Shown piece by piece: positions 2,711-56,800 of a stretch of 64,000 nucleotides of DNA. The translations under genes and the position numbers were made by a program. A model generated the notes under the pieces. That model searched no databases and was not told the origin of the DNA. It saw only the letters and a list, made by a program, of their open reading frames with translations. Position 1 is the stretch's first letter, and every line of letters starts with the position of its first letter. Source of the DNA: Octopus bimaculoides (taxonomy: Eukaryota); assembly GCF_001194135.2 (NCBI RefSeq), contig NC_068994.1, forward strand, positions 3,409,751-3,473,750, given 5' to 3'.

Positions 2711-3159
2711 CTATTTGCTCTGTCTCAAAGTACATGGGAAGACACTGGGGGAATTAGTCCAACCTGTGCCCCAGGTAGGGGACATGGCAGGGAAACCTCT
2801 GGCCCAGGAATAACTATTTTCCCAGTTCTGAAGGGTCTGGTGACTGCATGTCGATGGGATACTCAATGGCTGCAGGATCAAGGTGGGAGGGTTTGGCTGC
2901 TGAATACCAACACCACCACCACCGCCACCACCACCACCGCCNNNNNNNNNNNNNNNNNNNNNNNNNNNNNNNNNNNNNNNNNNNNNNNNNNNNNNNNNNN
3001 NNNNNNNNNNNNNNNNNNNNNNNNNNNNNNNNNNNNNNNNNNNNNNNNNNNNNNNNNNNNNNNNNNNNNNNNNNNNNNNNNNNNNNNNNNNNNNNCTGTG
3101 AAGCATGTGGGGTGGAAGATGGTGCAGGGGTTGGGTGTTGCTGTTGTTGCTGTTGTTGT

Positions 3160-3225
<66 letters not shown>

Positions 3226-4646
3226 TGCTGTTGTTGTTGCTGTGTTGGTGGCGGCGGTGCTAGGGGTGGTGGTTGTTGCTGGGCTGCTGCCGCAGGGGGT
3301 GTCTCTACCGGCTGAGATGAAGAATGCTCACAATGGCTGGTGTTCTTTGTGGAACCTGCTCGAGGAGTGTAGGTCTTCCTGTTGGTCTCCTGGTTGGCTG
3401 CGAATGGCTTCTCTCCAGATTCCTGTGACTCAGCGTGATGGTGGTGGTGATGGTAATGGTGATGGTGGTGGTGGTGGTTACAGAAGTTTTGATGTCGGTT
3501 TTGAATCTTTGGTTCATTGTTTCGTTTGGGGGTGACTTTGTGTGCAGAGCAGCAGGTTGGAACAATTGGCGAGGTGGCTTTGCAGCTATGGACTAAACAG
3601 GTTGTAGCTGGAGCCGGCTGACAACATGGTGATGGAATCTTCTCACCTGTATGGGTTCGTTCATGAGTGTTCAGGTGAGCTCTTTGGCTAAATGATTTGT
3701 GACAATACACACAAGTGAATGGCTTCTCTCCGGTATGAGTTCTTTGGTGATTGTTCAAATGGTCGCGCTGACTAAATGCTTTCTTACACACATGACATTT
3801 GAATGGTTTTTCGCCGGTGTGAATGCGTTCATGAGTGTTGAGGTGGGCTTTCTGGCTAAACGACTTAAAGCACACGTCACAGTTGAATGGTTTCTCCCCT
3901 GTGTGAATCCGCTCATGGTTACGCAGGTAAGTTCTCTGACTAAAAGTTTTGTTACAGATGTAACAGCTGAATGCTTTCTCCCCTGTGTGGACCCTTTCAT
4001 GATTCCTTAGATGTGCACGCTGACTGAAAGCTTTCAAACAGAACGTGCAGCTGAAGGGTTTCTCTCCCGTGTGGACACGTTGATGGTTACTCAAGTGGTC
4101 CCTTTGAGCAAACGCTTTACAACACATGTGACATCGATAGGGTTTTTCTCCAGAGTGGACCCTCTCGTGGACTTTCAGGTGAATCTTTTGGCTGAAAGAT
4201 TTTGGACAAGACTCACACTGGAATGGTTTCTCTCCTGTATGGATGCGTTCATGGCTCTTCAAGTGGGCTCGTTGACAAAATGCTTTGCAGCAGTACGCAC
4301 AACTAAAGTGTTTGCCACCAGCAAATGCTACTTCATGATTGTTCAGATCTGCTCGTCTTGAGAAAGCCTTGCGACAAGTGTTGCACTTGTATGGCTTCTC
4401 CCCGTGTTTGTGATTATAATAAACCGGCTGCTCCATCACCACGGACTTACGATTATTTAAGCTCGAACCTTCCCTCGTTTCACTTGTGTCATCGCTGCTA
4501 CCAGGAATGTTGCTGTTATTGTTATTACTGTTATTGTTGTTGTTGTTGTTGTTGCTGTTGTCATTGTTGTCTTGCAGATGTAGACCACAAGTATGATAGT
4601 TTGGTGGTGGCACCATTGTAGGATATATGGGTTGGTCGGAATACAT
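2711..4646 (-). CDS. C2H2 zinc-finger protein ZNF1 (1 atypical + 8 canonical fingers; polyN, polyH, polyQ tracts), single coding exon interrupted by an assembly gap
   Basis: ORF 4646-> with CACC-ATG context. Eight CxxC-x12-H-x3-H fingers, mostly TGEKP-linked. The 155-N gap at 2942-3096 breaks the frame. The frame ending at TAG 2711-2713 encodes NSYSWARGFP...SVFPC, matching the ZNF2 C-terminus, so it is preferred over the ORF-track stop at 2814. Confidence 0.9.
2942..3096. other. Assembly gap (155 N) inside the ZNF1 CDS; other gaps at 13350-13359, 28257-28379, 61331-61340 and 62352-62534
   Basis: Runs of n, mostly abutting simple repeats. Confidence 0.99.
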
Positions 4647-9545: not shown

Positions 9546-10504
9546 TAGAAAAGGTAATTGATGTAGTGTATGATGACGATGGTGGAGATGAATATTTTGG
9601 TAATCTATAGTATGATGATGTTTACACCGAGGTCAGCCGGAGCGAGTAGAGACCTATAATCAGAGCTATTCCAGCGGTGACCATCCCATCTTCTTCCAAC
9701 GTGCAAGGAGTTAGCTGAGGACTACATGGAATGCTGCCTTTATTTCTATTTTTATTTGTCTAAGACGGTGATTTGAGGATGGTGAACGCTTCCTTCCTCC
9801 CACAACCCTGATGATGAGGAGATGGGGTTATGATGGTGATAGTTGTGAGATAAAGGGAACAGGACGAAGATAAATGAGAAAGGAAATACAAAGAGAAAGA
9901 GGCGACGTATTTAATAAATAATAGAGAACACCTGCAGCAGACATTGATAGAAAAAGTGGGAGGGACGATGGTGGTGGTGGTGACGGCGGTGAAGGAGAAA
10001 TTCAAAGGTTTGTAGAAAAAAAATTAAAGGTGAAATAGGGGTGTTTTATGTCTTGTTCTATAACCTTAGTGGGTACAGGAGATATTTTGGGGAGCTGAAG
10101 AGTGATGTTACAAGCTGATTCGACCCTAGTATATCGATGGTACTGATTTAATTGACCCCAGAGGGATTTTGAACCCCGAACGTAGGGGAGACAAACCGAT
10201 TCTGTGTTGTATATACTTCTTTCTCCCAGTCGGGCTACACACACGTTCACAAGGTAGGACCGATGAGATTGTGTGATGTTCATGCCTTCCTTAAAATCAT
10301 CAGGTGATGGAGCCTAGCACAAATGGAGGTCAGGAGGGAGGGGGGAGATATGAGTGATAGAATCGATCTAATTATTCTGTTGAGTTTATGACCCCGGACC
10401 GATGAAAATCGAAAGACAATCTCAATGTGATTCGAACGTAGATTATGGAAGACCCAAACTAAGCCACCAGATCGATTCTCACCACATTTGCCACACATAA
10501 GGGT

Positions 10505-12280
10505 TGAGCTAACCTGCTAAAAACAGCAGCCAAACTTCCTTCAAACCACATTTACCCGTCTTCAGGAAAGAGGAGGGAAGCAATATATATCAGAAAATGG
10601 TAGTCATCGATATCTCTGCCAACAGATGGCATGGTCACGGTTGGAATACTCGATCAGGCTTGACCTGGGACTAAACAACGGCCAGTTCTATAAAAGGAAG
10701 ACCACATTCGCTCCAACCGTGATCCCCGACGATACAACTGGTACTTATTTTTACCGAGATCAGGCGGTACAGATGTACTAACTTTACTGACACGTTGAGA
10801 GGAGTTGGTCCATACATAGTTAATTAGTCTGCTAGAAATAACTGCTAAATTTCCCTCAAATCACACTCTTATGATCTTAGAAAAATGAAAGACACGCTGG
10901 ACAATATATATATATACACACATATACACAGATGGGTTGTCGTGGTTGGAACATCTTTGATCGATAGGTCTACTCCTCCAAGACTTACCTGGTGCGTAGC
11001 AACAACTTCTTTTCATTAGACACAAGGCTAATGGAGGAGTGGTGCTAGTTGAATGAACTTCAGTGTATCACTGGTATTCTACACTGTGATTATATACATT
11101 TTCTCAATAGACAAAAAGGCGGATGTATATACACACACACAGTGAGGGAGAGAGAGAGAGAGAATGAGAGGTAGATAGAGAGAGATAAGATTTTACATCT
11201 TTTAATCTTTTCACCAGAGAAGTTTCGTATCGAAAAACCGAAAATGAACCAGGATATGCAGGGAAATGTAGTCCCTCATATATATAAATAGATGGGATGG
11301 TCAAAGCTGGAACGTTTTTCCTCCCCGGGTTGTTTGGCGACGACTGACCTAGGGCTTAAACGTCAGCGAATTGAAACTAAAACGAGTTAACAAGGTAGCT
11401 CCTATGTGGTCACTCAAGATGCTAGAAATAGCAGCTAAATCTTCCTCTATTAACGCCATACCGTCTTTATTTGACAATGTAATAAACTGACATAGAAAAG
11501 AACAGGATAGTTACGGATGGGGCGTTTTTGATGGAAGATTTGCTCAATAGAATAAAGTACCAGTGAAAAACCGTGGTCGATTTAATATTTCTATAAGTAT
11601 TCGAGAGGTGGATGGAATTATATAAGGGTAAGACTGAGCTGGGGTTCAACAACAACAACAACAACAACAATTGAAAATAAAAATTTTAAAAACAGGATAT
11701 TGCAATGTTGGGATACAAAAAATAATGAAATTATTTAACTATCATTCGACCCTGTTTATCGTCAAACCAGGCAACTGGTCTTTTTCCTCGACATAGAAAT
11801 CCTCTTCACACATCCACTTGCATCCCGCCTACAATAAGAGAAAAAAAATATCTTCCTCGAGACAGGCCGCTACATCTTTCGCGTGTGTCTTCGAGCGGGA
11901 TTTGAAGAAGTCTGTGAATTGATGCGTTAAGAGAAGCATGTAACAGACTTTATTTTCGTTAACTTTGTTGCCAATCATTTTTATGGAACCGTAATAGTTG
12001 TCTACAGGAATAGACATCATCCCCAAACCCGACCCACGTCAACTGTCCTTGTTTGAAGGACGGCGGAGGCGCTCCTCGATGTGATCGCTCGACATCTCTA
12101 AAAGTAGCAACCAAATCACCCTCTACTGTCCTTTACAAAAAATGTAGGACAATGCATAATGTAGTCTTAGAGACACTGGTTTATAAAATACGGGATGGTC
12201 ATGGCTGGAACACCTTTGATCAGAGGTCTGCTCGATCATCCCTGATGTAGTTAGATAGCAATATCAACAAACTTGCTTTA
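10505..12280 (+). mobile_element. Cluster of about 5 same-orientation copies of interspersed repeat family D
   Basis: Core TGCTAGAAATAGCAGCCAAA...GATGGGATGGTCA(T/C)GGCTGGAA...(CAA)n at about 10505, 10800, 11250, 11390 and 12085. Other copies at about 9660(-), 17355-17545(-), 17900-18200(-), 26965-27230(+), 40425-40610(+), 43060-43150(-), 54410-54580(-) and 60560-61050. Confidence 0.7.
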
Positions 12281-18946: not shown

Positions 18947-20515
18947 ATGTATTCTGTACAGTCTATGGCGTTTCCACAAGCTTTTCCTCAAAATGACTTG
19001 CATCACCACCATCATCATCATCACCACCAGCCACAACAGTTGAAAGTGAACTTGAAACAACCTGTCCCACAACAACAACAGCAACCACCACCACAACCAC
19101 AACAACCACCACCACCACCACCACCACAGCAACCACAACCAACACTACCACTTCAAACATCAACTATCATAGCTCAAGGAATTTCCAGCTCTGTCCCCGC
19201 TGTGTCTTCAGCCAACCATCAACATGTAAACAACAGCAGCAACAGTGCCACAAGTAAGAAACCATTCAAGTGTGACATCTGCCGGAAAGCCTTTTCTCGC
19301 AGAGCAAACTTGGACCATCATGAAAATGCCCCTGCGACAGAAAAGCATTTCAGTTGTGGCTATTGTTTCAAGGCGTTTTCACAGAGAGACAAGTTGAAGA
19401 GTCACCAAGCTATTCACACGGGAGAGAGAAACTTCCACTGCGACATTTGCCAGAAGTCGTTCACGCAGAAAGATCACCTCAACAACCACTCGCGGACACA
19501 CAGTGGTCATCGGCCTTTTAAATGTCAGGTTTGCTCGAAGGCTTTTTCACAGCGGGCTCATTTGAAAAACCATCATCGCATACACACTGGCGAGAAGCCA
19601 TTTCACTGCACCTTCTGTGGCAAAGGGTTTAGCCAAAGTGCACATCTTGCTAAGCACGAACGAGTGCATACTGGTCTCAGGCCATTCAGCTGTGCCTACT
19701 GTGGCAAATCATTTGCACAGCGCAGCAACTTGGACAACCACGAGCGCATCCACACTGGCTTGAAACCCTATCACTGTGGTGTGTGTTCCAAGTCTTTTGC
19801 TCAGCGAGATCATCTAAACAACCATGAACGTATTCACAGTGGTGAGAGACCATACAGGTGCACCACTTGCTCCAAGTCGTTTGCACAGCGTGCACATCTC
19901 AACAACCACAAGCGCATCCACAGCGGCGAGAAACCCTACACATGCTTGATCTGTCAGAAGTCATTCTCGCAGCGAGCTAATCTGAAAAAGCACGAACGCA
20001 CACACACTTCGGAAGACATTCAGAAAGCATCATCATCACAGTCAACTGCAGAAAACACCACAGCCTCAGTTGTTGACATGAATTCAACACCAGCACCAGC
20101 ACCAGCTTCCACTACGCCTTCATCACAACAACAAACAGTTCACACTCTTAATGTGTCTCCTGCCTCTTCAGCTTCGTTAATGATGAGTGCATCACCTTGT
20201 TGTGCCTCATCGTTTTCCACACACCCTCAGGATCCCCATCTGCATCCCCATCAAGTGATGGTGCCAGACAGACTGTCAAACAGCTACTGTTGGTCTCGTG
20301 GCTTTCCTGTCACTGCCTGGAGTGATAGCCCTGCCGTGCCAACAGTCCCCGCCGGCAGTGTGTTTCCTTGCAATGGCGGCATTGTTGGAGTGCACAGTAG
20401 CGGTGTGGGGGTGGTGTGTAGTGCTGGAACTGGCTGCAACAGCCAACACCCAAATAAACATGGAATACAACTGGATCTCAATAAACCCAATTCTCATCAT
20501 AAAGGAAAGCATTAG
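18947..20515 (+). CDS. C2H2 zinc-finger protein ZNF2, 522 aa (1 atypical + 8 canonical fingers; polyH/Q/P N-terminus), paralogue of ZNF1
   Basis: Intact ORF with GCC-ATG. Pyrimidine-rich acceptor ttctcttcctgctcatccAG at 18923-18924 and an in-frame upstream TAA. Eight canonical fingers with TGEKP-like linkers. AATAAA at 20650-20655. Confidence 0.95.
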   Translation: MYSVQSMAFPQAFPQNDLHHHHHHHHHQPQQLKVNLKQPVPQQQQQPPPQPQQPPPPPPPQQPQPTLPLQTSTIIAQGISSSVPAVSSANHQHVNNSSNSATSKKPFKCDICRKAFSRRANLDHHENAPATEKHFSCGYCFKAFSQRDKLKSHQAIHTGERNFHCDICQKSFTQKDHLNNHSRTHSGHRPFKCQVCSKAFSQRAHLKNHHRIHTGEKPFHCTFCGKGFSQSAHLAKHERVHTGLRPFSCAYCGKSFAQRSNLDNHERIHTGLKPYHCGVCSKSFAQRDHLNNHERIHSGERPYRCTTCSKSFAQRAHLNNHKRIHSGEKPYTCLICQKSFSQRANLKKHERTHTSEDIQKASSSQSTAENTTASVVDMNSTPAPAPASTTPSSQQQTVHTLNVSPASSASLMMSASPCCASSFSTHPQDPHLHPHQVMVPDRLSNSYCWSRGFPVTAWSDSPAVPTVPAGSVFPCNGGIVGVHSSGVGVVCSAGTGCNSQHPNKHGIQLDLNKPNSHHKGKH

Positions 20516-25751: not shown

Positions 25752-26789
25752 ATGAATTATATAAAGAATGTGACAGGAAACCGCTCTTTTTTAGGCTCCA
25801 TGTCCACTTTGAACATTTTTCAGTCTAAAAAGAAAACATCATTTCAGGGCACAAGTCAACGATTTGTTGTGCCGAATCAGCCGATTGTAACAAGACCGTA
25901 TTCAAAATTACAACTGAAATCATTGGATTCTTTTCAGTGGGACGGTAACATTTACCAAATGAATCGAACTATTAAAAATAAAGCGAACAATAGTTTATTG
26001 TCCTTAACTAGCATATTATGTTTCACTGAACACATGGAGAATACACCGTTGGATAACATGAGCATGTTGTTTCAATCAAACCAGCATTGTGCAAACAACA
26101 GACGAAACACACAGCCAGACGAAGACAATATTCTGTCGGGAATTTTCAATGAAGATGTTTCAAAGGCAACACAAATGGAGAAAAAAGAAAGAAAACCATT
26201 AAGATATTCGTCAGTCATTGCTTGTGAAAGGCTTCTATTAAAATATCCAGACAATTTGATGTATCTATTATTGCAAATGGTACTGACGCCAGAAATACAT
26301 TGTCAGCCATTTCAAAACGAAAAGCACAGGAAATCATTATCTGAAGAGAACTTATTGGCAAAATTAGTTAAATGTAATCTGAATGAGTATGTCGGTCGTG
26401 TTGTGATGTTTTCTCTGACTATAAAACATGAGAACGGTTTTTTTGATAAAAGTAACAATTGCAGAGACCTGGCAGGTGAGAAGCAACACAAGAGAAATAA
26501 TTCGCCATCTGGTGAAGCCAGATTGAAAGACACGGGTGACGACATTCAGAAAAGCCAGCCGCCAAACATTTTCACAAAGGAACAACGTGCAATGCTGATA
26601 TATTACGTATTTTTCCAGTGTTTGACGTTTTCCCTGTATTATGTCCATCAAGTATTAGATCAGCTTGACACAGACACTGTAGCAATGATGAAACCATTTT
26701 CATTGTACATCGTACAATTTTGTTTATTGTTGTTGTTTATCTACATTAAATGGTTATTTAAGTCTCCATCCTCTCTTAAGGACAGCTAA
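25752..26789 (+). CDS. Hypothetical 345-aa protein, single coding exon, two predicted C-terminal transmembrane helices
   Basis: 1038-nt non-repetitive ORF in AT-rich DNA. In-frame TAA at 25743-25745, acceptor-like ttttcatgttacattAG at 25739-25740, AATAAA at 26825-26830. Hydrophobic segments AMLIYYVFFQCLTFSLYYV and FSLYIVQFCLLLLFIYIKWLF. No family confidently recognised. Confidence 0.7.
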   Translation: MNYIKNVTGNRSFLGSMSTLNIFQSKKKTSFQGTSQRFVVPNQPIVTRPYSKLQLKSLDSFQWDGNIYQMNRTIKNKANNSLLSLTSILCFTEHMENTPLDNMSMLFQSNQHCANNRRNTQPDEDNILSGIFNEDVSKATQMEKKERKPLRYSSVIACERLLLKYPDNLMYLLLQMVLTPEIHCQPFQNEKHRKSLSEENLLAKLVKCNLNEYVGRVVMFSLTIKHENGFFDKSNNCRDLAGEKQHKRNNSPSGEARLKDTGDDIQKSQPPNIFTKEQRAMLIYYVFFQCLTFSLYYVHQVLDQLDTDTVAMMKPFSLYIVQFCLLLLFIYIKWLFKSPSSLKDS

Positions 26790-30422: not shown

Positions 30423-31490
30423 TTATATGTTCATATAGTGCGTCACCCCTTCGTGCTGTGGTATATCCGTGGTATGATGTGCTTGAGATACACTGAGGGT
30501 CGCTTGGTAAGTTTCTGAAGTTGCTGCAGCAGTGTTCTGTGGGACACAACTCAGTTTACGGTCGCCAAGTTTATTGGTTCGCTGGTGTCGCTCCAGATGG
30601 TCTTTACGAGAAAAGGCAAAGCCGCAAATGTTACATTTGAAGGGTCTCTCGCCCGTGTGCGTCCGTTTGTGGACAGTGAGGTGGTATTTCTGGGAGAACG
30701 ACTTGGTACACATATCACAGCAGAATATCTTCTCGTTGGTGTGGGCCTTTTTGTGTCTCTCTAGATAGCTGTTCTCTGAGAACGCCTTCCCACAAACGTC
30801 ACACTTGTAGGGAAGCAAGGCAGCATGAATTCGCTCATGCATATCTGCATCGGACCTTTCTGTGAAGGCTTTCCAGCAGGCTTTACAGTTGAATGGATTA
30901 TCGTCTTGGTAGTTAGCAGGCACCTGTGGTTGGGGTTGAGGCGGCGGCGGCGGTGGAGGCGGTGGTGGTGGTGGTGGCGGCTGTGGCTTCTGATAGGTAG
31001 TGCTCTGGTTCTGGAATAGAGATTCTTCGTGTGTCTTAAAATGGCGAGTTAGATCTCCATTTCTTCCGAAAGCACAGCCGCAAATATTACATTTATATGG
31101 TTTGTCAACAGCAAAAGATCTTGCAGTGTTTGGGTTGGGATTCTCATACTGGGGGGCCATCGAAGGCATGGTCCCCTGCCCATGGGTTTTCATGTGACGA
31201 GTCAGATTACCATTTCTTGAGAAACAGAAACCACAAATGTTGCACTTGAAAGGTTTCTCGCCAGTGTGTATGGTCTGGTGCTGTTTCAGGTGTGATTTAT
31301 GAGAGAACGATTTTCCGCAAACATCACAACCAAATGGTTTGACAGCCTGATGGGTGAGTTTATGCCTCTCCAGGTTGTCAAACCGTGAGAAACCTTTACC
31401 ACAGATATCGCAGCTATGACTTGTCTCGATGGCATGAATCACTTCAGTTAGTTCGTAACCTGGAATGTTGGAGGTGATGATGTGATTCAT
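30423..31490 (-). CDS. C2H2 zinc-finger protein ZNF3, 355 aa from first ATG (8 fingers in 3+1+4 blocks; polyP; last finger lacks second His)
   Basis: The track ORF starts at a TTG inside a poly-T acceptor (AG at 31517-31516). First ATG at 31490 in gacACC-ATG context. Fingers include CDVCGKSFSHKSHLKQHQTIHTGEKP. An upstream coding exon cannot be excluded. Confidence 0.92.
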   Translation of the reverse strand: MNHIITSNIPGYELTEVIHAIETSHSCDICGKGFSRFDNLERHKLTHQAVKPFGCDVCGKSFSHKSHLKQHQTIHTGEKPFKCNICGFCFSRNGNLTRHMKTHGQGTMPSMAPQYENPNPNTARSFAVDKPYKCNICGCAFGRNGDLTRHFKTHEESLFQNQSTTYQKPQPPPPPPPPPPPPPPQPQPQVPANYQDDNPFNCKACWKAFTERSDADMHERIHAALLPYKCDVCGKAFSENSYLERHKKAHTNEKIFCCDMCTKSFSQKYHLTVHKRTHTGERPFKCNICGFAFSRKDHLERHQRTNKLGDRKLSCVPQNTAAATSETYQATLSVSQAHHTTDIPQHEGVTHYMNI

Positions 31491-32364
31491 GGTGTCGTCT
31501 CTTCTGGCACCAATGCTACAAAAGACAAACAAAAAAAAAAAACAAGCAGTTAGGATTTTGAAAAAACATCCAGTGTATATGTGTGTGAATGTGATGTGGT
31601 AGGGTTAATTTGTTGACCTGTGGAAGATTGTTGCATATCCTAGATAAAGCAGTTGAGATCATGTGTGACCACAGACATCATGAATATGATTAGGACATCA
31701 GGGTGAAAGACCAAGATTAGATCTCAACAGACTGGACATCACAGATGAAATAACAGATCAACACATGTATTGATATGCTGATTCTATGCGGAATACCTAG
31801 TCAACCCACATCATTTCTGAAAAACACAGAGTAGACTAAAAGTGAGAACTTCGTTAAGGGTACACGTATCTGTGGAGTGTTCAGCCACTTGCACGTTAAC
31901 AGGAAAGACTGATTTAGTAGAAACAGGTGATGGATATGAAAGATGACTGCTCTATCTAACAGGATGAATAACCATGCAAACATTCTCTCAATAGTTCCTA
32001 TCTGAGGAATTAAGATAGGAATTATGATTTTAAGCAGTTTCCTCTATGATTCCTGATTATATCTTATACTGGTCAACAGGAATTGCAACTGGATACATAT
32101 GTCTTGGTCACGGATACAGTACAGTAAACTGTATCATACTGTGGTATCTACTTACGGCTAAGTAAACTGAGCTATAGACAGAAACATGTCCTTGTCATGG
32201 CCACAGGGAAATGAACTCAACACTGTTGGCAATACAGATGTTTTGGATAATGAACTCAGTGTTTCAAATCCACCTCAAATAAAGTGAAAGTGTCAATGTA
32301 TGAAAGGGCTGCAGGTTTGTCACAGTTGGAATCTGATCCTCATCTTCAATTTCATGTTGAGAAC

Positions 32365-39854: not shown

Positions 39855-41315
39855 CAATATATTTTTGATAGCCTTTATGAAAGTTTAGCTAGAATTTGCA
39901 GGTTTACGAAACCGTTAAGAAATATTTGGAACGATTTCTATGACGATTCTGTAGTTCCGTGGGAGAAAAGTTCGGGTACTTCTTTTTTTTAATGTAAGTA
40001 TAAGTATAAGTATTAAAGACTTTATATTTTTGTGGAACACTTTTGAGAAATTTCAGCGATGTGAGACGAACTGAGATTTGAAATAATATCTCGAGCAGTT
40101 TTACCTCTTGCTATGTTATCATTATCAACATCATTACTATTTTAACCCCTCCTCATTCACTGTCTCCGCCTCTGTGCCAGAATGGGTTCAGTGAACTTAC
40201 TTCAGATATATTAACAAAAGTCTACATTCTTTCCTAGCTCGTCTCTAGCTCCATTATTCTCAGTTGTGCCTTCATTATTTCCGCCATCACCAACACCACG
40301 TAGTCTGCAGTAAGCCCCCTGACGCATTCCCTGGGACTACACACCAGCGAGTGAGTGGGAGGGAAAGAGAGGAGAGGAGAGGAAAGAGAGACAGACAGAC
40401 AAGAAAATGAGGAAGAGAGAGTTTTAACATGCCTGTCCGAGTTGCTAGAAATAGCAGCGAAATTTCCTTCAAATCACACCTGTTTTAATTATGAAAAGAT
40501 GCATTACATAACGTAATCGTACTAAAAGGATTTGACTGTCATGGCAGGAATGCCTTTGATAGTAAATCTGCATCATATTAGGATTAACCTGAGATTAAAC
40601 AAAAATACAATACTTTGTGGTCTTCTATTCCCTTTTGCCGTCTGGAAACAATACAAAGAATTGTTATTACCTCCCTTTATATTATGAACCAAACCCGGGT
40701 TGGAAACTGGCCGAGGTTTGAGCAGAGGATGAAATGCATCTCGTAATCTGAGTTCAAGTCCCAACAAACAATCATGTTAATGATAATTACATTTTCACTA
40801 TACATATAACTACATTTTGACGTATATTTAATAAAAAATATCTTTAATTTGATCTAAATTTAATGAATTCTTCCAATATAAAAGGGGTCGTCTCCCTACA
40901 TAATGCTCTTCTTCGGGGTGCTATGAGATCACAAAGGGAGTAGCAAACTTGAAGCTGGCAGTATGGAGAAGGGTAAGCATTGCGTGGTTAGAGGGGCCGG
41001 GAATTTTCTGAAAAATTTAAAATATTTAAAGCCAGGTATACTGGTTAGACAGTACTGTTTATGTTTTAAGCATGTTATCAAACATAACTTGTGTTTTAAA
41101 CATTAAAAAAAAATCTTTGTCGTGATTCAAGAAAATATGGTGGCGATGGTGGTGTTGGGGGGACATTATTTTTTCTCTCAGAAGCGTGATTGATGTATCA
41201 GTGTATCAGTTCTATTCTTCTTTGGTTATAGCCACAAACAGTTAACATCGGCGCGGCTCTCGTCGGGACAAATATCTAAAGATTGGCCCATACTGGATAT
41301 GATTCTTTATGAATA

Positions 41316-41390
41316 TCGTCGTCGTCGTCGTCACCGTCGTCGTCGTCGTCGTCACCGTCGTCACCGTCGTCGTCACCGTCGTCGTCATCG
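41316..41390 (+). repeat. (CGT)n/(CAC-CGT) trinucleotide repeat
   Basis: CpG-rich run adjoining a family C tail. Confidence 0.9.
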
Positions 41391-42019
41391 TTTAGCAGCT
41401 TGTCTGCCATGCTGGCCTGGTTTGGAAGATTTGATCGGACCTAACAAGCTGCAAGACTGAGTAAAGCTCCAGTGTCCGCTTTGACTTAGATATCTACAGC
41501 TGGGTGTGTTTCCTAATATCAACCAGTTGACAGTGTAGGTGCTTTCCCCCCCCCCCTCACTTTGCACCACAAGCATTTGTGAGGTTGCTACCAAGAAATT
41601 TGCAAGACAAGAAAAATAAAGCTCCTTTGACTGAGCAGGAGAGAGGGAGGTGGCTTTAAGGTAGAGACCAGATGGAGAACAATTGACCATAGATCAGCAG
41701 GATGAAAGTAAAGCCTGGCTCAAAATAACCAGAACTTTGTCTTGAGTTTATCATTCTTGCAATGACCAGTACAAAATATAAACAATCAGTTGTTTGATAA
41801 TTTGAATACTTTGGAGATGGTCATCGAGGTGAGATCAAAGATTGAAATTAACCAAAAGAGGAATGAGTCCATTGTATCAACTGACCAGAAGACACTTTGT
41901 AGAGTATCGACAATTATTGACACTCTACAAAGCATAGGAGAGACCCACAATGAAACGCTTCTCTCATATCAGGGGTGGTGGGTGGTGGTGCTGCTAGACC
42001 ATAACCAGAGGAAGACAGT

Positions 42020-42340
42020 TCATCTGATGGGTATAAAGTTATATTCAGAGACACACACCCAGCTTTTGGCCCACAGATGTGCTGTCTCCTCCTCTCTCTC
42101 TGCCTTTTCTATCATTATTATAATGGACTTTGCTGCTCACAGCTGGCTAGTTTTGAACCACTCCCACTCAGACACTCTCTATTCATCTATCTCTCTCCCT
42201 CTCACACCCACAAATCCAGTACTAGCCATTACATCCAGTCCTTTCTCCCCACTACATCACGCCCATGGAACCCTCACCATGCACATCTTTCCTGCAGATG
42301 TCAATTTCCAAGTTTAAGCAGAAATATTGATGCCCTAAAT
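42020..42340 (+). mobile_element. CR1/Jockey-like LINE 3' ORF2 fragment
   Basis: SLCLFYHYYNGLCCSQLA and HYIQSFLPTTSRPWN resemble the CR1-type ORF2 C-terminus; frameshifted. Confidence 0.65.
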
Positions 42341-43865
42341 GTCATTGGTCTTGGAGAACCTGCAAAGACTATGGACACAGTCTCCCCAGTCAAACCCACT
42401 TTGGTAGTATTAGTAGTAGTAGTAGTAGTAGTAATTTGATAGAGCTTGGTGATCTGACCATTGATCTTCTAGGATCCACCCCCCTCCCGCTCAGCATCAA
42501 TGTAAGAAACACTGTTGGCACAGTTAAATTCTTCCACTACCTCTTCACAATTTGCCATACTGCAGTCTCATGACTTCACCGTTTCCCTAGCAGAGTGGCT
42601 GAATGAGTGCTATGCCTTGCCAAAGTGACAACCGTACCCTACATAGCAAGGCCCCATTGTCTCTCTGTGAGGCATTTTGAAAATGCTTGCATGGCAATAT
42701 TCATCTATAAACATCAACAAATACTTGCAATTTCCAACAGGTGAATACTAATGGCTGTATTTCCTTATTCATTCATTCCATTTTACATCTATTTTATAAT
42801 GCCATTTTATCATACCAGCAAGGATTACGTGAATATATTTTATTGTGGTTTTATTTTTACAGCTAGATGCCCTTCCTGTTGCTAAACGTTACATGTTTTT
42901 CAACCAATGGAATAATATTCTGTGTTAAAAGATATAGACATATTTCCCACAAATGATGTTTTGGACTTTTCCATCAAATCAGTCTTCCCAATACTATTAT
43001 ATTTAGTTCCAGTGTAACCTCTTAACTTCTTAATGAAGGTAATCTAGCTAATATATTCCTATCTTAAAAAATGATTAGATGTAATTTGAGGGAAATTTGG
43101 CTGCTATTTCTTGCAGACCAAACGTCCATGTAAGGGCTCATCCTTCTAAATGTTACATAATATGGTAGTTACTGGTCCAAGAGAGGCTACTCTCCGTCAA
43201 TGACTGCTTCATTGATTAAATATATAGTAAATGACCAAATGTATTGTGTAGAGAATGTATTGAGCCCCAATCAGTTTATCCCCAGGATTACTTCGATTTA
43301 TAGTTTGATGGGTCCAATGAAATGCTATTTGTTACAAGTTGTCACTTTTCCAGTTAATAAGGACCACTTTTCCCCCACTCGACATAAACATTTAATTTTC
43401 TGTGAAATTAATTCTTAAAGTCTAAAAAAGCATCTCTCTTTTCCTTTAAGGGTCCCCAATTATTATCCACTTAGTTTGTGTTTCCTTTTCCAAATAAGAA
43501 ACGAATTTAATTCCTTCAGAATTGTTGACGCAAGTCAATTCCGTAATTTAATCATTTTCCTGAATTATCTAAACGTAACTTCGCCCTGGATGAAGTTGGC
43601 TTTCTTGTTTATTAGAAGTCTGGAAGGTATCGATTTGTTAATTTTTCCTAGACATGCTTATAAAAACTGAATTATAAAAGTAATGTTCATCACCAATGTT
43701 AAATTACACTGATTTTATTCACTGGATTCCGTTATATACTGGCTGACCTTACATATTTAGCAAATATCTAATTAAATCATTGAAACTATTAGATTCTATA
43801 TTTCAAGTCGAGATTCCTGAGTTGTGTAGTGTCTTGGGAGAGTCATTACGCCAGTAATAGCAACA

Positions 43866-48950: not shown

Positions 48951-49671
48951 ATGGATCGTTCTGCAGGAATGAAGAATATTCACGATACCGTTTGTGGTTT
49001 ACAATTTCCACAGGGACACAATCTTCAAGGAAGCCAAAGAGTGGCACCAATGAGTGAATGTTTAATGTTTCATGGCGCTATTTCCGGTAAACATTTCCCA
49101 CAAGAGCACAGCATGCAGTCTCAGAGAGTTCCTTACATCACGACAGATACCGTCTTCCCAACCAATATCTACTCAGGCAAACAGATGTTTACCAGTCAAC
49201 CCTGCTATCTGCCAGCAACTACTTTGACCAGTGTTGATAGATCAGAAGATGACCGTTCGGTCCATAACACAGGGACAGGCAGTAGCGGTGGGGGTGGTGA
49301 TCACAATCAGTCTACAACATCAGCATCTCCGCCTCTGCCTTCTTCAAAGCATCATCAGCAGCAGCCACAGCAGCAAGTACAACAGCAACAACATCATCAT
49401 CATCAACAACAACAACAGCATCATCATCATCATAGCCAACAGCAACAGCAAAACCAGTTGCATAAATCAGCTGCTAGCAACTCTGATAAATCTGGTTCAT
49501 CGTATCAAAGTTGTTGTTCCAATGCCAACTGTTGTCAGCAGAGGAAGAGTTCGCAACAGATGCAGCCACAGACTGCGTGCAAGACACCTTCTCCAATGAA
49601 TCACCAGACACATCAACATCAACAACAACAGCAGCAACAACAACAACTTCATAACCAGCCACGACAACAGC

Positions 49672-49711
<40 letters not shown>

Positions 49712-50789
49712 GCAGGCTGTTAAACCTCGTCAAAAACAACTGTTCTGTGACTTTTGTGGGAAAGAGTTTGCACAGGAATATCTTATGCAAATGCACCGAA
49801 GAACACATACTGGCGAAAGACCGTTCCAGTGTGAAATCTGTTTGAAGCAGTTTGCCCGTCGAGACACTTTGAGGATTCATTTGAGAACACACACAGGAGA
49901 GAAACCGTTTCAGTGTGACGTTTGCTTCAAACAGTTTGCCCAAAAAGAATACTTAGTGGTCCACAAGAGGTCACACACAGGAGAGAAACCTTTCCAATGT
50001 GACTTCTGCATTCAGAAATTTGCTCGCCGTGACACATTACAAATTCACCGTCGAATGCACACAGGGGAGAAACCGTTTCAGTGCACGTATTGTACGAAGC
50101 AGTTTACACAGCAGAGTAAACTGCAGGTTCATAAACGAACTCATGTTCGTCGGAAACGATTCCATTGCGACATCTGCTTGAAACTGTTTGCCCGGAAGAG
50201 TTACCTAGCAACACATAAACGCTGCCACACCGGAGAGAAACCTTTTGGCTGCGATATTTGTTTGAAGCATTTTTCTCAAAGAGATTATTTGCAGATCCAT
50301 CGCCGCATCCACACTGGAGATCGGCCATATAAATGTGAGGTGTGCTTTAAGCAGTTTGTTCGTCAAGACACTCTCAAGATTCACCATCGTACTCACACTC
50401 GGGAGAAGCCATACGGCTGTGATATCTGCTTAAAAAACTTCGCCCACCGGCATTACCTGGCCATCCACCGCCGGTCTCACACAGGCGAGCGCCCATACCA
50501 ATGTGAATTTTGTCTGCTCCAGTTTGCTCGACGAGATAAGCTCCTTGTACACCGCAGGTCTCATACAGGGGAGAAACCTTTCCAGTGTAACAACTGTGAC
50601 CTGAAGTTTGCCAGTCCTGATGAGCTGAGACATCACAAGAAGTCTCATGGTCCTACGACTGTCTCCATGGATTCAGGAAGCTTTAACAGTGCTAACGTCA
50701 ACCACCAACACCATCATCATCACCATCACATTCATCAACATCAACAACCACAGCAGCAGCAGCAGCAGCAACAACAACATATTTCTTAA
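48951..50789 (+). CDS. C2H2 zinc-finger protein ZNF4, 612 aa (11 tandem fingers; polyQ/polyH tracts)
   Basis: Intact ORF. Acceptor atccctAG at 48937-48938 just upstream of the ATG. Eleven CxxC...HxxxH fingers, mostly TGEKP/TGERP-linked. Confidence 0.95.
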
Positions 50790-53884: not shown

Positions 53885-56800
53885 CTAGAAGAGAACAGAG
53901 TTGGAAACATGAAACATAATTGTCATAATGGTGATAGTGGGGGACTGAGTAGTTTGAAGGATTGGGTTGACAGTGGTTGACTAGCCATATCAGGCCAAAG
54001 TATACTATTTTATGTTCAACCTAGCCAAATCTGACCTCTTACACATACTCTACAATGTCATTCTAAACAAATCAATCATATCATTAAAATCTTGAAGTTA
54101 TAACCTAATGCATAATTAATTCAAAACACCTTTAAACCGAGTGAGGAGAACCTTCTTTCGTACCAGGAACGGATTGTGTGTGAAAAATAATGAATCTTAA
54201 AGACATAACTTATATTTCCCTCGCTTTTTTCATGTCAGTGGGCAGCATTAAATTAATTGTCCAATTTATGATGGAATGATTTCCAAGTCGCCATCTCCCA
54301 CTAATTTGATCCAAGTGGAGATAATCTACACCTAATTACTGCAAAATATGCGGAGTTATGCTCCTGTTGTGTGCATGTTTAGCCTTCAGTAAAAACACTG
54401 ATCAAGCAGACCTATGGTCAAAAGTGTTCCAGCCTTAATAATCCTATCTTTTGGGGGATATCATATATAGGAGTACAATGTCCAAATTATCTATATTTTA
54501 AGAAAGTAGGATGTATTTTGAGGGAGATTTAGCTACTGTATCTAACATCAAATGACCATGCAGGCTACCTCAGTGTCACTGGTAGCAAGGGAGACATTTT
54601 ACTGAATATTTTCTTTTACTGGTTTAATTAGAGGATCAGGAAGGAGTTATCTACCTTTAGGCGAAAAACTGTTGAGGAGCAGTGAGAATAGGGGAATGGT
54701 AGGAGTGTCCAGTACGAAACAGTTTTGTTGTTTAGATTCAGATTGATTCAACAAGCAATAGAAGATGCTCCAGTCTAGTAATGGAAGCCCGTCTATCATA
54801 GCTTGGGTCAACTTGAGGCAACAGTAAAACACACTAGCCCCAAGTGTCACTCAGTGGGGTCAAATCGAGTTCTCTTGATTGCAAAGCAAACTTATGAACC
54901 AATTTGGCCAGGCTGTGTCAATACCCTCTCCTGCCTACTCCCAGTAATACAACATAACATCTACTGAACAGCTACATACATATTGTAGATATATATATAT
55001 ATATATGAGGTCTGACCAAAAACTATCAGGACTGCTGCTATAAAAAAAGAAAACTACAACTCGTATCGATTCAGCATTTAATCTCCTTCAAAGCAATCTC
55101 CTTCTGAAGTCACACTTGATCCAGCATTGTTTTCATCGATGGAAGCATTCCTGGAACTCCTTTTGGGGGGATAGCAAGCAGCTGCCTTGTCGTATTCTCT
55201 TGGATCTCCTCAATGTCTTGAAATCTTGTTGGGGTCTCTCACTGCAAAGACCGAGCTTTGGTTTCACGATCATAGCCATAGACCCAGGATTCGTCACCTG
55301 TTATAACTGCTTGCAAACAGGTTTCCTCTTCCTCAACACAATCAAGAAGTTCATGAGCAGCTGAAAACCTGATCTTCTTTTTGAGACAACCACATTTGAC
55401 ACACTTTACTTTCAACCACTGTTATGAACAAAGAAAGAAAGCAAGAACGTTAGAGTTCCAAGTCAAGCTGTGCCAAGCAGCTTCTCTTTGTGTACTTTAG
55501 CTCCGTTACTGTAACAACAGTCCCGATATTTTTGATCAGAACTCATATATAGATGTGTGTGCATATATATATGTATGTATGTATACTTACTAGCATCGAT
55601 GACAATGGCATTGAGTAGACCTTTGCCTCGTACAGTCTTAACAAGGGAGGACGGAAGTTTGGACAGTTCCGCACGTAAGATGTGTCCCATCTTCTCAGAG
55701 TTCTCTACCAACATTTCATCTTTGATCACATCCATTGCTGCTATAGCAACTTGACAGGCAAGAGGATTCCCACCAAACGTAGAGCCATGTTCACCTGGTT
55801 GGATGGTCAACATCACCTCATCATCAGCTAGAATAGCAGACACCTGTGAAATAGAAGAAAATAGAATAACAGTGTTAGCAGCAAACGAACATTGTTGCCG
55901 GGGGGGGGGGGTTCAGTGTGAGAATGTAGTGAAACAAGTGCGTTGCTGTAAGCAAACACTGTTTCCATGAGAAGACTACCTAAAAAACAACAGTATTGTT
56001 GCAGAGTTCTATATTTAAGAGATGAGGAATTATATATATTTGTCCTCATCTTGTTTGTTGTTAACATGTTTTGGCTAATATGCCCATGGGCATGTGGCGT
56101 AGTGGTTAAGAGCGTGGGCTACTAACCCCAAGATTCAGAGTTCAATTCCAGGTAGTGACCTGAATAATAATAATAATATCAAAAAATACCTTAGGAATGA
56201 GAACCCAAGTGGAGATCGCTTATTATTTGGTTTTCTTCATAGGTAACCTAATTAGGCTTAGGCAATGCTTAGATGCTGGTGTCTACTTTTGGGAGGTTCT
56301 GTGGCATAGAGATTCTCTGAGTGTGTGTGTGTTACATATATTTAGTATAAATGAATACATGAAGGATATCGACTTACCGGCAAAACCCCACCAGACAAAG
56401 CCTTGCCCAAGATGACAATGTCAGGTCGAACATTCTCGTGATCAACAGCCAACATCCTAAAATAATGACAATAAATATTATCAATAATATTAATACGCTG
56501 ACTTTTTGTTTTTGTTCATACTTGTTGTGTGCATCACACTTACTTCAATGAAGTGACAAAGTGAGAGAAGAGGACAGAGAGGAAGTAAGAGAGAGAGAAA
56601 GAGAAAATGAGAGTGAAAGAGAAAGAGAAAATGAGAGTGAGAGAGAAAGAGACAGTGAGTGATGACAGCGTTTGCTTTGTGTTTTTAAATGTTTATCACA
56701 TCGCAAGAGAAGTAGATACATAGATACATTGCTGAATCAAAAGCGGGAGAGAAGAGGAACACCATGAAAGTGAAAGAAAGGAAGTAAGAGAGAGACAGTA

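What the first reader, a model, noticed from the sequence alone, without database searches (positions are those of the whole stretch)
2711..2830. Hidden C-terminal motif shared by the two head-to-head ZNF paralogues (NSYxWxRGFP...W..SP..VFPC)
Seen: the minus-strand frame ending at 2711 reads NSYSWARGFPAMSPTWGTGWTNSPSVFPC (motif 2818-2732), and ZNF2 reads NSYCWSRGFPVTAWSDSPAVPTVPAGSVFPC (20279-20371). The flanking low-complexity tails are unrelated. The ORF track misses this because the 155-N gap shifts the frame. Inference: a short Trp/aromatic motif kept in two otherwise diverged tails looks like a selected effector or co-repressor-binding module. I recognise no KRAB, SCAN, ZAD or BTB domain in these proteins. 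How expanded cephalopod C2H2 genes recruit effectors is largely open, so this could mark an undescribed effector motif.
Basis: partly seen in the sequence, partly recalled or inferred. Interest (0 to 1): 0.72.

Follow-up and report, generated by a model that had tools for sequence, protein, structure and literature searches.

The report
Conserved tail motif in cephalopod zinc-finger genes
Two neighbouring octopus zinc-finger genes share a short tryptophan-rich peptide near their C-termini; it is also kept in cuttlefish and other cephalopods, matches no described domain, and probably docks an unknown partner protein in one small, old gene subfamily.

Summary
Both peptides lie at the stated coordinates. 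The similarity is far above chance (z = 9.2, in that frame only).

The conserved residues use different codons in the two genes, and synonymous sites between the paralogues are saturated. So the peptide has been kept by selection on the protein.

The N run is 154 bases, not 155. ZNF1 reads through into the motif frame if the true gap is 0 mod 3, not 1 mod 3.

In six ungapped relatives the zinc fingers and the motif share one reading frame. These are two Sepia pharaonis genes, an Octopus bimaculoides gene with O. sinensis and O. vulgaris orthologues, and several RNA-seq contigs.

The motif is the core (N-x-Y-x-W-x-x-x-F, usually [WL][ES]NxYxWxRGFP, then a W block and a PC block) of a 40-80 residue conserved C-terminal block. 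It sits in tails that otherwise diverge fast. All members also start MY..Q.M.

There is no match in Pfam, PDB or the literature, and none of eight named co-factor motifs tested is conserved. AlphaFold predicts disorder.

It is most likely a docking motif for an unknown partner. It marks a small old coleoid subfamily, not the expanded zinc-finger repertoire. Function is untested.

The parts
3096..4646 (-). ZNF1 coding sequence before the gap (517 codons): N-terminal MYSDQPIYP, ten C2H2 fingers (3648-4397), then a His/Gln-rich low-complexity tail (polyQ 3138-3242).
   Evidence: ORF list and translation; Pfam zf-C2H2 and zf-H2C2_2; coordinates.
2942..3095 (.). Assembly gap of 154 N between a polyQ-coding repeat and a polyGly-coding repeat. 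It puts the two halves of ZNF1 one base out of register.
   Evidence: Gap count. The finger frame ends at 3096 and the motif frame starts at 2941.
2711..2941 (-). ZNF1 coding sequence after the gap, in the motif frame: 76 open codons plus a TAG stop at 2711-2713.
   Evidence: Three-frame translation. It is the only frame with similarity to ZNF2.
2789..2827 (-). ZNF1 block A, NWENSYSWARGFP. The family-invariant core N-x-Y-x-W-x-x-x-F is at 2792-2818.
2744..2764 (-). ZNF1 block B, GWTNSPS (family pattern W-x-N-x-P).
   Evidence: Alignments; coordinates.
2732..2746 (-). ZNF1 block C, SVFPC, followed by TLRQSK* (2711-2731). That ending aligns with SVKQSKQ and SMKQGRQ of the P0120-type relatives.
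18947..20515 (+). ZNF2, an uninterrupted 522-codon ORF: N-terminal MYSVQSM, ten fingers (19259-20008), a diverged Ser/Pro/Thr-rich tail, then the motif.
20279..20308 (+). ZNF2 block A, NSYCWSRGFP.
20315..20335 (+). ZNF2 block B, AWSDSPA.
20357..20419 (+). ZNF2 block C, SVFPC, plus a ZNF2-lineage extension NGGIVGVHSSGVGVVC. The extension is also conserved in the ZNF2 orthologue (L002: GSVFPCNGGIVSIHGRGVGIVC).
4620..4646 (-). ZNF1 N-terminal peptide MYSDQPIYP, part of the family-wide MY..Q.M start.
   Evidence: N-terminal alignment; regex.
18947..18967 (+). ZNF2 N-terminal peptide MYSVQSM, the same family-wide start.

Best explanation
**Shown.** ZNF1 and ZNF2 belong to a small, old subfamily of coleoid cephalopod C2H2 zinc-finger proteins. 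All members found share one layout:
- a start MY..Q.M;
- an array of canonical fingers;
- a long, fast-evolving low-complexity tail;
- near the C-terminus, a conserved peptide module whose core is [WL]-[ES]-N-x-Y-x-W-x-R-G-F-P, then a W-x-[ND]-x-P block and a [FL]-[PS]-C block.

The module is maintained by purifying selection on the protein sequence. In ZNF1 it is almost certainly in frame with the fingers. The apparent frameshift comes from an arbitrarily sized assembly gap.

**Inferred.** The module does not fold on its own. It most likely acts as a short linear docking motif. Its alternating aromatic side chains (N, Y, W, then F, and a second W) would insert into a pocket or groove of a partner protein. 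That partner is most plausibly a transcriptional co-factor, brought to the DNA sites read by the fingers. The partner is unknown and is not one recruited through eight named co-factor motifs tested here (WRPW, eh1, PxDLS, RRT, hexapeptide, SNAG, LxxLL, HBM).
For: **Sequence and chance.** Both peptides are at the stated coordinates. Similarity is z = 9.2 in that frame only.

**Selection.**
- In NSYxWxRGFP, 6 of the 7 identical residues with degenerate codons use different synonymous codons. In SVFPC it is 4 of 5.
- Four-fold sites in the fingers match at only 7/31.
- In two orthologue pairs pN is 0.04-0.11 in the fingers, 0.105-0.21 in the C-terminal block and 0.37-0.51 in the linker tail. pS is saturated throughout.

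**Phylogenetic spread.**
- Sepia pharaonis gene A is a single 703-codon ORF with fingers plus SWENNYSWSRGFPVGPRWSPVWANAPSSLSC. Gene B carries GWSNHYGWPRGFPVTPRWS.
- O. bimaculoides XP_014771536.1 and its O. sinensis and O. vulgaris orthologues carry SWENNYLWSRSFAMPPM.TSYWPNVPAPLPC.
- RNA-seq contigs L002-L004 and L006-L011 carry it too.
- N, Y, W and F are invariant in eight aligned tails.

**Reading frame.** Motif frame equals finger frame in all ungapped genes.

**Disorder.** AlphaFold2 on the tail gives mean pLDDT 52, pTM 0.12 and no secondary structure.

**No known domain or motif.**
Against: - No functional data of any kind exist. Partner binding is inferred only from conservation, composition, position and predicted disorder.
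- The AlphaFold alignment had four rows, so a small fold or a fold-on-binding element cannot be excluded.
- G and P of RGFP are not invariant: Octopus P0120-type has RSFA, and L002/L003 have GGFT.
- The ZNF1 frame across the gap is inferred, not observed. No transcript or gap-free assembly of this locus could be retrieved.
Confidence: 0.55

Rival explanations
1. The shared string is residual similarity from duplication or gene conversion between neighbouring paralogues, with no selection on it.
For: The genes are adjacent paralogues.
Against: - Synonymous sites between the paralogues are saturated: four-fold identity is 7/31, and nucleotide identity is 19/30 in block A and 11/15 in block C, the differences at conserved residues being synonymous. 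Recent conversion is therefore excluded.
- The motif persists in cuttlefish and in a third paralogue lineage.
- pN is 2-5 times lower than in the flanking tail.
Confidence: 0.02
2. In ZNF1 the motif is an out-of-frame relic. ZNF1 really ends at 2814, or is a pseudogene, and only ZNF2 uses the motif.
For: As assembled, the finger frame runs through the Ns to a stop at 2814 and the motif lies in another frame.
Against: - The shift depends entirely on the length of a 154-N placeholder between two simple-repeat tracts.
- The motif frame is open for 76 codons and is the only frame similar to ZNF2.
- The 2814-frame product (RWWWWRWWWCWYS...) resembles nothing in ZNF2 (z = 0.4).
- Every ungapped family member is in frame.
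- The ZNF1 ending PCTLRQSK* aligns with PCSVKQSKQ of relatives.
Confidence: 0.06
3. The block is a small folded or fold-on-binding element that acts within the protein or between copies, for example dimerisation or packing against the N-terminal MY..Q.M peptide or the fingers. It would not be a co-factor docking site.
For: - In P0120-type genes the conserved region spans about 80 residues, longer than a typical linear motif.
- The N- and C-terminal conserved peptides always occur together.
- The AlphaFold alignment was very shallow.
Against: - There is no predicted secondary structure and pLDDT is about 52.
- Spacing between blocks A, B and C varies by insertions of 6-8 residues. That is tolerated by linear motifs but not by compact folds.
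- The block is rich in Pro, Gly and Ser.
Confidence: 0.15
4. The module is a trafficking or stability signal (nuclear import or export, or a degron), not a transcriptional effector.
For: Conserved C-terminal peptides in disordered tails often serve these roles. An Arg and KQ.KQ-type basic residues follow the core in several members.
Against: There is no classical basic nuclear-localisation cluster in the invariant core. The SPOP-type pattern near the core (PMSSS, PMTTS) occurs only in the P0120-type proteins and is not conserved across the family. This idea is as untested as the best explanation.
Confidence: 0.12
5. The motif is a general effector domain of the massively expanded cephalopod C2H2 repertoire, a KRAB analogue.
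For: The proteins have no KRAB, SCAN, BTB or ZAD domain. The two papers consulted describe no effector domain for cephalopod zinc-finger genes.
Against: - The exhaustive profile search found only two true hits among 1.84 billion representatives.
- The two other zinc-finger genes in the window lack the motif.
- Only 2 of the 120 best zinc-finger hits carry it.
- ZNF2 and the P0120-type gene have conserved orthologues rather than species-specific expansions.
- Caveat: the two-sequence profile would have missed P0120-like variants, which score 21-28 bits against a cut-off near 35.
Confidence: 0.04

Closest known systems
Zinc-finger-associated domains that define C2H2 subfamilies: KRAB (PF01352), SCAN (PF02023), ZAD (PF07776) and FiNZ (Wells et al. 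2023, PMC10547256)
   Same: It is a conserved non-finger sequence attached to a tandem C2H2 array that marks a lineage-restricted subfamily. Like FiNZ it is short and matches no known domain.
   Different: - It lies at the C-terminus, after a long disordered tail. KRAB, ZAD and FiNZ are N-terminal.
- It is aromatic, Pro- and Gly-rich, whereas FiNZ is described as enriched in Glu, a feature it shares with KRAB.
- It is predicted to be disordered.
- It is found in a handful of old, conserved genes, not in hundreds of fast-evolving copies.
- There are no Pfam hits.
Groucho/TLE-recruiting peptides: WRPW/WRPY of Hairy/Hes and Runx, and the eh1 motif FxIxxIL (own knowledge)
   Same: These are short Trp/aromatic peptides near the C-terminus of DNA-binding transcription factors. 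They dock into a co-repressor pocket and work from a disordered region.
   Different: The pattern [WFY][KR]P[WFY] and the eh1 pattern are absent from the tails of all seven family members. The only two matches are in the degenerate first-finger region of L002. W-x-R-G-F has a different spacing and lacks the Pro. The motif is 26-78 residues from the C-terminus, not at it.
Hox hexapeptide / PBX-interaction motif, [FY]-P-W-M-[KR] (own knowledge)
   Same: The Y-x-W-x-R core (YSWAR, YCWSR, YLWSR) has the same Tyr-x-Trp-x-basic skeleton. It is a Trp-centred peptide outside the DNA-binding domain.
   Different: The defining Pro and Met are missing. Both the strict pattern [FY][DEP]WM and the relaxed pattern [FY].W[ML] fail in all members. 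There is no homeodomain context.
PEX5-type di-aromatic pentapeptides, WxxxF/Y (own knowledge)
   Same: Five of seven members carry two tandem W-x-x-x-[YF] units (WENNY-x-WSRGF). All carry at least one.
   Different: The match is to a regular expression only. PEX5 motifs are helical and belong to a cytosolic import receptor. These are Gly/Pro-flanked, predicted non-helical, and sit in presumed nuclear DNA-binding proteins.
SNAG domain of Snail/Gfi/Scratch zinc-finger repressors (own knowledge)
   Same: It is a short conserved peptide at the extreme N-terminus of a zinc-finger protein. This is comparable to the family's MY..Q.M start, which accompanies the C-terminal motif.
   Different: The sequence is unrelated. 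MPR[SG]F is absent.

Membership tests
C2H2 zinc-finger proteins | Tandem C-x2-C-x12-H-x3-H fingers with TGEKP-type linkers | tested here: met
   zf-C2H2 E = 1e-40 (ZNF2) and 1.6e-30 (ZNF1); zf-H2C2_2 E about 7e-57 for both. Ten fingers align one to one.
KRAB zinc-finger proteins | KRAB box (PF01352) | tested here: not met
   hmmscan at E <= 1 on ZNF2, the ZNF1 pre-gap part and the ZNF1 tail found no KRAB. None in eight family tails at E <= 10.
SCAN, BTB/POZ and ZAD zinc-finger proteins | SCAN (PF02023), BTB (PF00651) or ZAD (PF07776) domain | tested here: not met
   None is listed for either protein at E <= 1.
FiNZ zinc-finger proteins (cyprinid fish) | 28-residue Glu-rich N-terminal FiNZ sequence | not testable with these tools
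   No FiNZ model is available. By the paper's description it is N-terminal, Glu-enriched and unique to cyprinids. The present motif is C-terminal with one acidic residue.
Groucho/TLE-binding WRPW class | [WFY][KR]P[WFY], usually at the C-terminus | tested here: not met
   The regex is absent from the tails of all seven members. The only two matches lie in the degenerate first-finger region of L002.
Groucho/TLE-binding eh1 class | [FHYW].[IVL]..[IL][ILMV] | tested here: not met
   No match in any member.
CtBP-binding motifs | PxDLS-type P[LVIPME][DENS][LM][VASTRG], or the RRT motif | tested here: not met
   No match in any member.
Hox hexapeptide / PBX-interaction motif | [FY][DEP]WM; relaxed form [FY].W[ML] | tested here: not met
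   No match to either form. Only the Y-x-W-x-R skeleton is shared.
PEX5-type WxxxF/Y motif | W-x-x-x-[FY] forming an amphipathic helix that binds the PEX14 N-terminal domain | tested here: inconclusive
   The regex matches once or twice in every member. No helix is predicted, and binding is not testable here.
WW domain | Fold of about 35 residues with two Trp 20-22 residues apart (PF00397) | tested here: not met
   The spacing between the first Trp (SWE/NWE) and the block-B Trp is 20-21 residues in three members, counted on the sequences. There is no Pfam hit at E <= 10 and no predicted strands. ZNF2 lacks the first Trp.
SNAG-domain zinc-finger repressors | N-terminal MPR[SG]F... | tested here: not met
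   Absent. The members start MY[SP].Q or MYQ.

The most novel reading that the evidence does not exclude
The N-terminal MY..Q.M peptide and the C-terminal NxYxWxxxF module together form a previously undescribed, coleoid-restricted effector system. It would define a new zinc-finger-associated domain class that recruits a so-far unlinked co-factor. In some species its strength might be tuned by A-to-I RNA recoding of the motif's Arg (R/G) and a neighbouring Asn (N/D), as hinted by transcript variants L002, L003 and L004.
Probability: 0.15. Interest if true: 0.65.

Novelty: new variant of a known kind. Interest (0 to 1): 0.4.

Why it matters
- **A handle on an unstudied problem.** The two papers consulted here describe no effector domain for cephalopod zinc-finger proteins. 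This motif gives a concrete mutable peptide: four invariant residues in at least three paralogue lineages, kept in both octopus and cuttlefish. With it one can fish for a partner and test activity for one conserved subfamily.
- **A limit on the claim.** It concerns a few old regulators, not the hundreds of expanded copies. It is a modest entry point, not a general answer.
- **An annotation problem.** The motif is invisible in current gene models. An assembly gap splits ZNF1. The Sepia pharaonis model CAE1244983.1 splices out the whole finger array. ZNF2-type proteins are missing from a collection of about 15 billion proteins.

Tried and rejected
- **Full-length ZNF2 search.** It was swamped by long vertebrate zinc-finger proteins. 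It was useful only because two of the 120 listed hits (P0083, P0120) carry the motif.
- **Word-indexed searches with the two tails.** Both found nothing.
- **Exact look-ups of ZNF2, the Sepia ORFs and the other window zinc-finger genes.** None is in the collection. The gap could therefore not be closed, and the species of the window could not be fixed.
- **Exhaustive search with the two-sequence profile.** It gave five hits. Three are spurious: two tandem-repeat proteins, and a repeat protein with NWSEGFPVT units.
- **Sensitivity of that profile.** It misses P0120-like variants, so the absence of non-cephalopod hits is weak evidence.
- **Pfam on the tails, PDB sequence search and literature string search.** Pfam and PDB gave nothing; the literature search returned only irrelevant matches to one string.
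- **Run accessions.** The exact accessions gave no paper. Accession prefixes matched 12 papers, and none of the 10 listed is on a cephalopod. The species of the Logan contigs remain unnamed.
- **AlphaFold with the eight-row alignment.** The four-row run gave a disordered model, so no fold search was made.
- **RNA editing as the source of the R/G difference in the motif among L002-L004.** The contigs differ at 10 A/G and 8 C/T sites, so polymorphism is equally possible.
- **WW-domain, Hox-hexapeptide, WRPW, RRT/CtBP and PEX5-like readings.** All were considered and set aside.
- **Overlap of the O. bimaculoides P0120 locus (L005) with the window.** Only repeats match.

Full report
**1. The observation**

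The minus-strand frame ending at 2711 reads ...QNWENSYSWARGFPAMSPTWGTGWTNSPSVFPCTLRQSK*. ZNF2 reads NSYCWSRGFPVTAWSDSPAVPTVPAGSVFPC at 20279-20371.

ZNF1 runs on the minus strand from 4646. ZNF2 runs on the plus strand, 18947-20515, and is 522 codons long. They are divergent neighbours 14.3 kb apart. Both start MYS.Q. Their ten C2H2 fingers align one to one, with 163/250 identical residues. Pfam sees only C2H2-type models in the two proteins and nothing in the ZNF1 tail.

The run of N is 2942-3095, which is 154 bases, not 155. The finger frame ends exactly at 3096 (517 codons) and the motif frame begins exactly at 2941. The two halves therefore join if the true gap is 0 mod 3. The gap lies between a polyGln-coding and a polyGly-coding repeat.

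**2. Chance**

The motif frame scores 79 against the ZNF2 tail. Shuffles average 30.1 ± 5.3, with a maximum of 58 in 1000, so z = 9.2. The other two post-gap frames give z = -1.0 and 0.4. The pre-gap tail and the N-terminal regions are not significantly alike.

The core N.Y.W...F occurs twice in the six-frame translation of the window, each time downstream of one of the two paralogous arrays. Shuffled windows give 0.14 on average. MAFFT resolves three blocks:
- NSYxWxRGFP
- W[ST][ND]SP[SA]
- SVFPC

**3. Selection rather than recent copying**

| Block | Identical residues with degenerate codons | Using different synonymous codons |
|---|---|---|
| A (NSYxWxRGFP) | 7 | 6 |
| C (SVFPC) | 5 | 4 |

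Four-fold sites in the finger region match at 7/31, which is about random. The duplication is therefore old, and the amino-acid identity in this frame has been maintained by selection. That in turn argues that this frame is translated in ZNF1.

**4. Relatives**

Two of the three word-indexed searches found nothing, and the full-length one was swamped. ZNF2 itself is not in the collection of about 15 billion proteins.

An exhaustive HMMER search with the two-sequence motif profile gave five hits among 1.84 billion representatives. Two are genuine:

- **P0124**, Sepia (Acanthosepion) pharaonis CAE1244983.1. In its genomic locus L001 the real gene is a single 703-codon ORF (10001-12112). It starts MYQSIY, holds the finger array, and ends ...SWENNYSWSRGFPVGPRWSPVWANAPSSLSCSSRPGKQ... 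in one frame. The deposited model had spliced the fingers out. A second gene 28.6 kb downstream (40768-42804) carries GWSNHYGWPRGFPVTPRWS.
- **P0123**, a fragment of RNA-seq contigs L002-L004. These encode a full orthologue of ZNF2 with 80% identity over the fingers. Its tail reads ...DRLNN[DN]YAWA[GR]GFTMASWGDGPAVANVPPGSVFPCNGGIVSIHGRGVGIVC...HHKGK.

Screening the 120 proteins listed found two more:

- **P0120**, O. bimaculoides XP_014771536.1, on CM046614.1 at 3.38 Mb. Its 90% cluster includes O. sinensis XP_029645462.2 and O. vulgaris CAI9733406.1.
- **P0083**, from Logan RNA-seq contigs.

These carry SWENNYLWSR[GS]F[PA].PPM...WPNVP.PLPC..KQ..Q and start MYPVQPMY.

Across eight aligned tails, N, Y, W and F of N-x-Y-x-W-x-x-x-F are invariant. 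In every ungapped gene the motif frame is the finger frame. Only the gapped ZNF1 differs.

**5. An island of constraint**

Global alignments of the two orthologue pairs show tails full of indels right after the fingers, followed by a conserved C-terminal block. That block is about 80 residues in P0120-type genes: LKDR.RD.QALSASARLQASAMTS.WMTSPYLQDM.QSWENNYLWSR....

Nei-Gojobori counts:

| Region | pN |
|---|---|
| Fingers | 0.04-0.11 |
| C-terminal block | 0.105-0.21 |
| Linker tail | 0.37-0.51 |

pS is saturated in all regions.

**6. What it is not**

- There is no Pfam family for any of the eight tails at E <= 10.
- There is no PDB sequence match.
- No relevant paper contains the motif strings. 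The only matches were to one string inside unrelated words.
- The two papers consulted, on cephalopod C2H2 expansions and on metazoan zinc-finger genes, describe no such domain.
- Patterns for WRPW, eh1, PxDLS, RRT, the Hox hexapeptide, SNAG, LxxLL and HBM are not conserved in the family.
- The only pattern that matches is the very degenerate W...[FY], which occurs in tandem (WENNY-x-WSRGF).
- AlphaFold2 on the P0083 tail with a four-row alignment gives mean pLDDT 52, pTM 0.12 and no secondary structure.

**7. Interpretation**

*Shown:* a conserved, selected C-terminal peptide module, together with a conserved N-terminal MY..Q.M peptide. It occurs in a small subfamily with at least three lineages in octopus and at least two genes in cuttlefish.

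*Own knowledge, approximate:* octopods and decapodiforms split roughly a quarter of a billion years ago.

*Inferred:* the module is a disordered docking motif for a partner protein, most plausibly a transcriptional co-factor. The grounds are its aromatic/Pro/Gly composition, its variable inter-block spacing, its place at the end of a low-complexity tail, and its predicted disorder. The partner is unknown.

**8. Scope**

The motif is not a KRAB-like attribute of the expanded repertoire.
- It gave only two true hits in the exhaustive search.
- It is absent from the two other zinc-finger genes in the window, 30423-31532 and 48951-50789.
- ZNF2 and the P0120-type gene each have an orthologue at 80% finger identity.

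Caveat: the two-sequence profile scores P0083 at 27.8 bits and P0120 at 21 bits, against a cut-off near 35 bits. More divergent members, including any outside cephalopods, would have been missed.

**9. Verdict**

It is a sequence-novel example of a familiar kind of thing, a subfamily-specific accessory motif on a zinc-finger protein. Interest is moderate.

Noticed in passing
L001:10001-37994 (Sepia pharaonis CAHIKZ030000917.1): The deposited gene model CAE1244983.1 (301 aa) joins the N-terminus to the C-terminal tail, skips the whole finger array as an 'intron', and adds an exon 26 kb away. The locus actually holds a single uninterrupted 703-codon ORF (10001-12112).
   Followed up: yes
L006 vs L007-L011, CDS positions 845, 846, 851, 959: One RNA-seq contig differs from five others only by four A-to-G changes (Q282R, N284S, H320R). 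Two of these codons lie in a finger recognition helix (SQQGNLKIH to SQRGSLKIH). The pattern looks like clustered A-to-I RNA editing.
   Followed up: partly
L002:1678 and 1693, vs L003 and L004: Inside the motif core, transcripts from three runs differ at A/G sites giving N/D and R/G (NNNYAWARGFT vs NNDYAWAGGFT). Overall the contigs differ at 10 A/G and 8 C/T sites, so editing and polymorphism cannot be told apart.
   Followed up: partly
window 4620-4646 (-), 18947-18967 (+); L001, L002, L005, L006: Family members begin with a conserved N-terminal peptide: MYSDQPIY, MYSVQSM, MYSIQNM, MYPVQPMY, MYQSIY and, if translation starts at an internal Met, MYPFPMY in Sepia gene B. It always accompanies the C-terminal motif.
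   Followed up: partly
window 20372-20419 and 20495-20512 (+): ZNF2 has further lineage-specific conserved tail blocks shared with its orthologue L002: NGGIVGVHSSGVGVVC (L002: NGGIVSIHGRGVGIVC) and a terminal HHKGK.
   Followed up: partly
L002:~500-640: In the ZNF2 orthologue the first finger's helix is replaced by a Pro-rich run (CDICDHHSPPPPPPPRPNANHHEN). The second finger carries helix-breaking prolines (FLSPDKPKVH). The two N-terminal fingers may have decayed in that lineage.
   Followed up: no
window 30423-31532 (-) and 48951-50789 (+): Two further C2H2 genes lie in the window, of 369 and 612 codons. They have different N-termini and no NxYxWxxxF motif, so the window holds several unrelated zinc-finger subfamilies.
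   Followed up: partly
window 55463-55843 and 56997-57365 (-): Two exon-like ORFs match class-III aminotransferase (PF00202, E about 1e-22 each, profile positions 185-242 and 268-354). By eye they resemble ornithine aminotransferase.
   Followed up: partly
window 25752-26789 (+): A 345-codon ORF with no Pfam match. Its nature is unknown.
   Followed up: no
whole window: None of the four zinc-finger ORFs of the window is present, exactly or as a detectable tail relative, in the collection of about 15 billion proteins. That collection does hold O. bimaculoides, O. sinensis and O. vulgaris proteomes. The source species, or the annotation state of this locus, is unresolved.
   Followed up: partly
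(ZNF2 vs L002; P0120 vs P0083): The proportion of synonymous differences is 0.77-1.0 in all but one region compared (0.67 in the ZNF2 linker tail). That is above the 0.75 expected at saturation. Part of the cause may be different third-position GC content (0.45 in the octopus genes, 0.53-0.54 in the RNA-seq contigs).
   Followed up: partly
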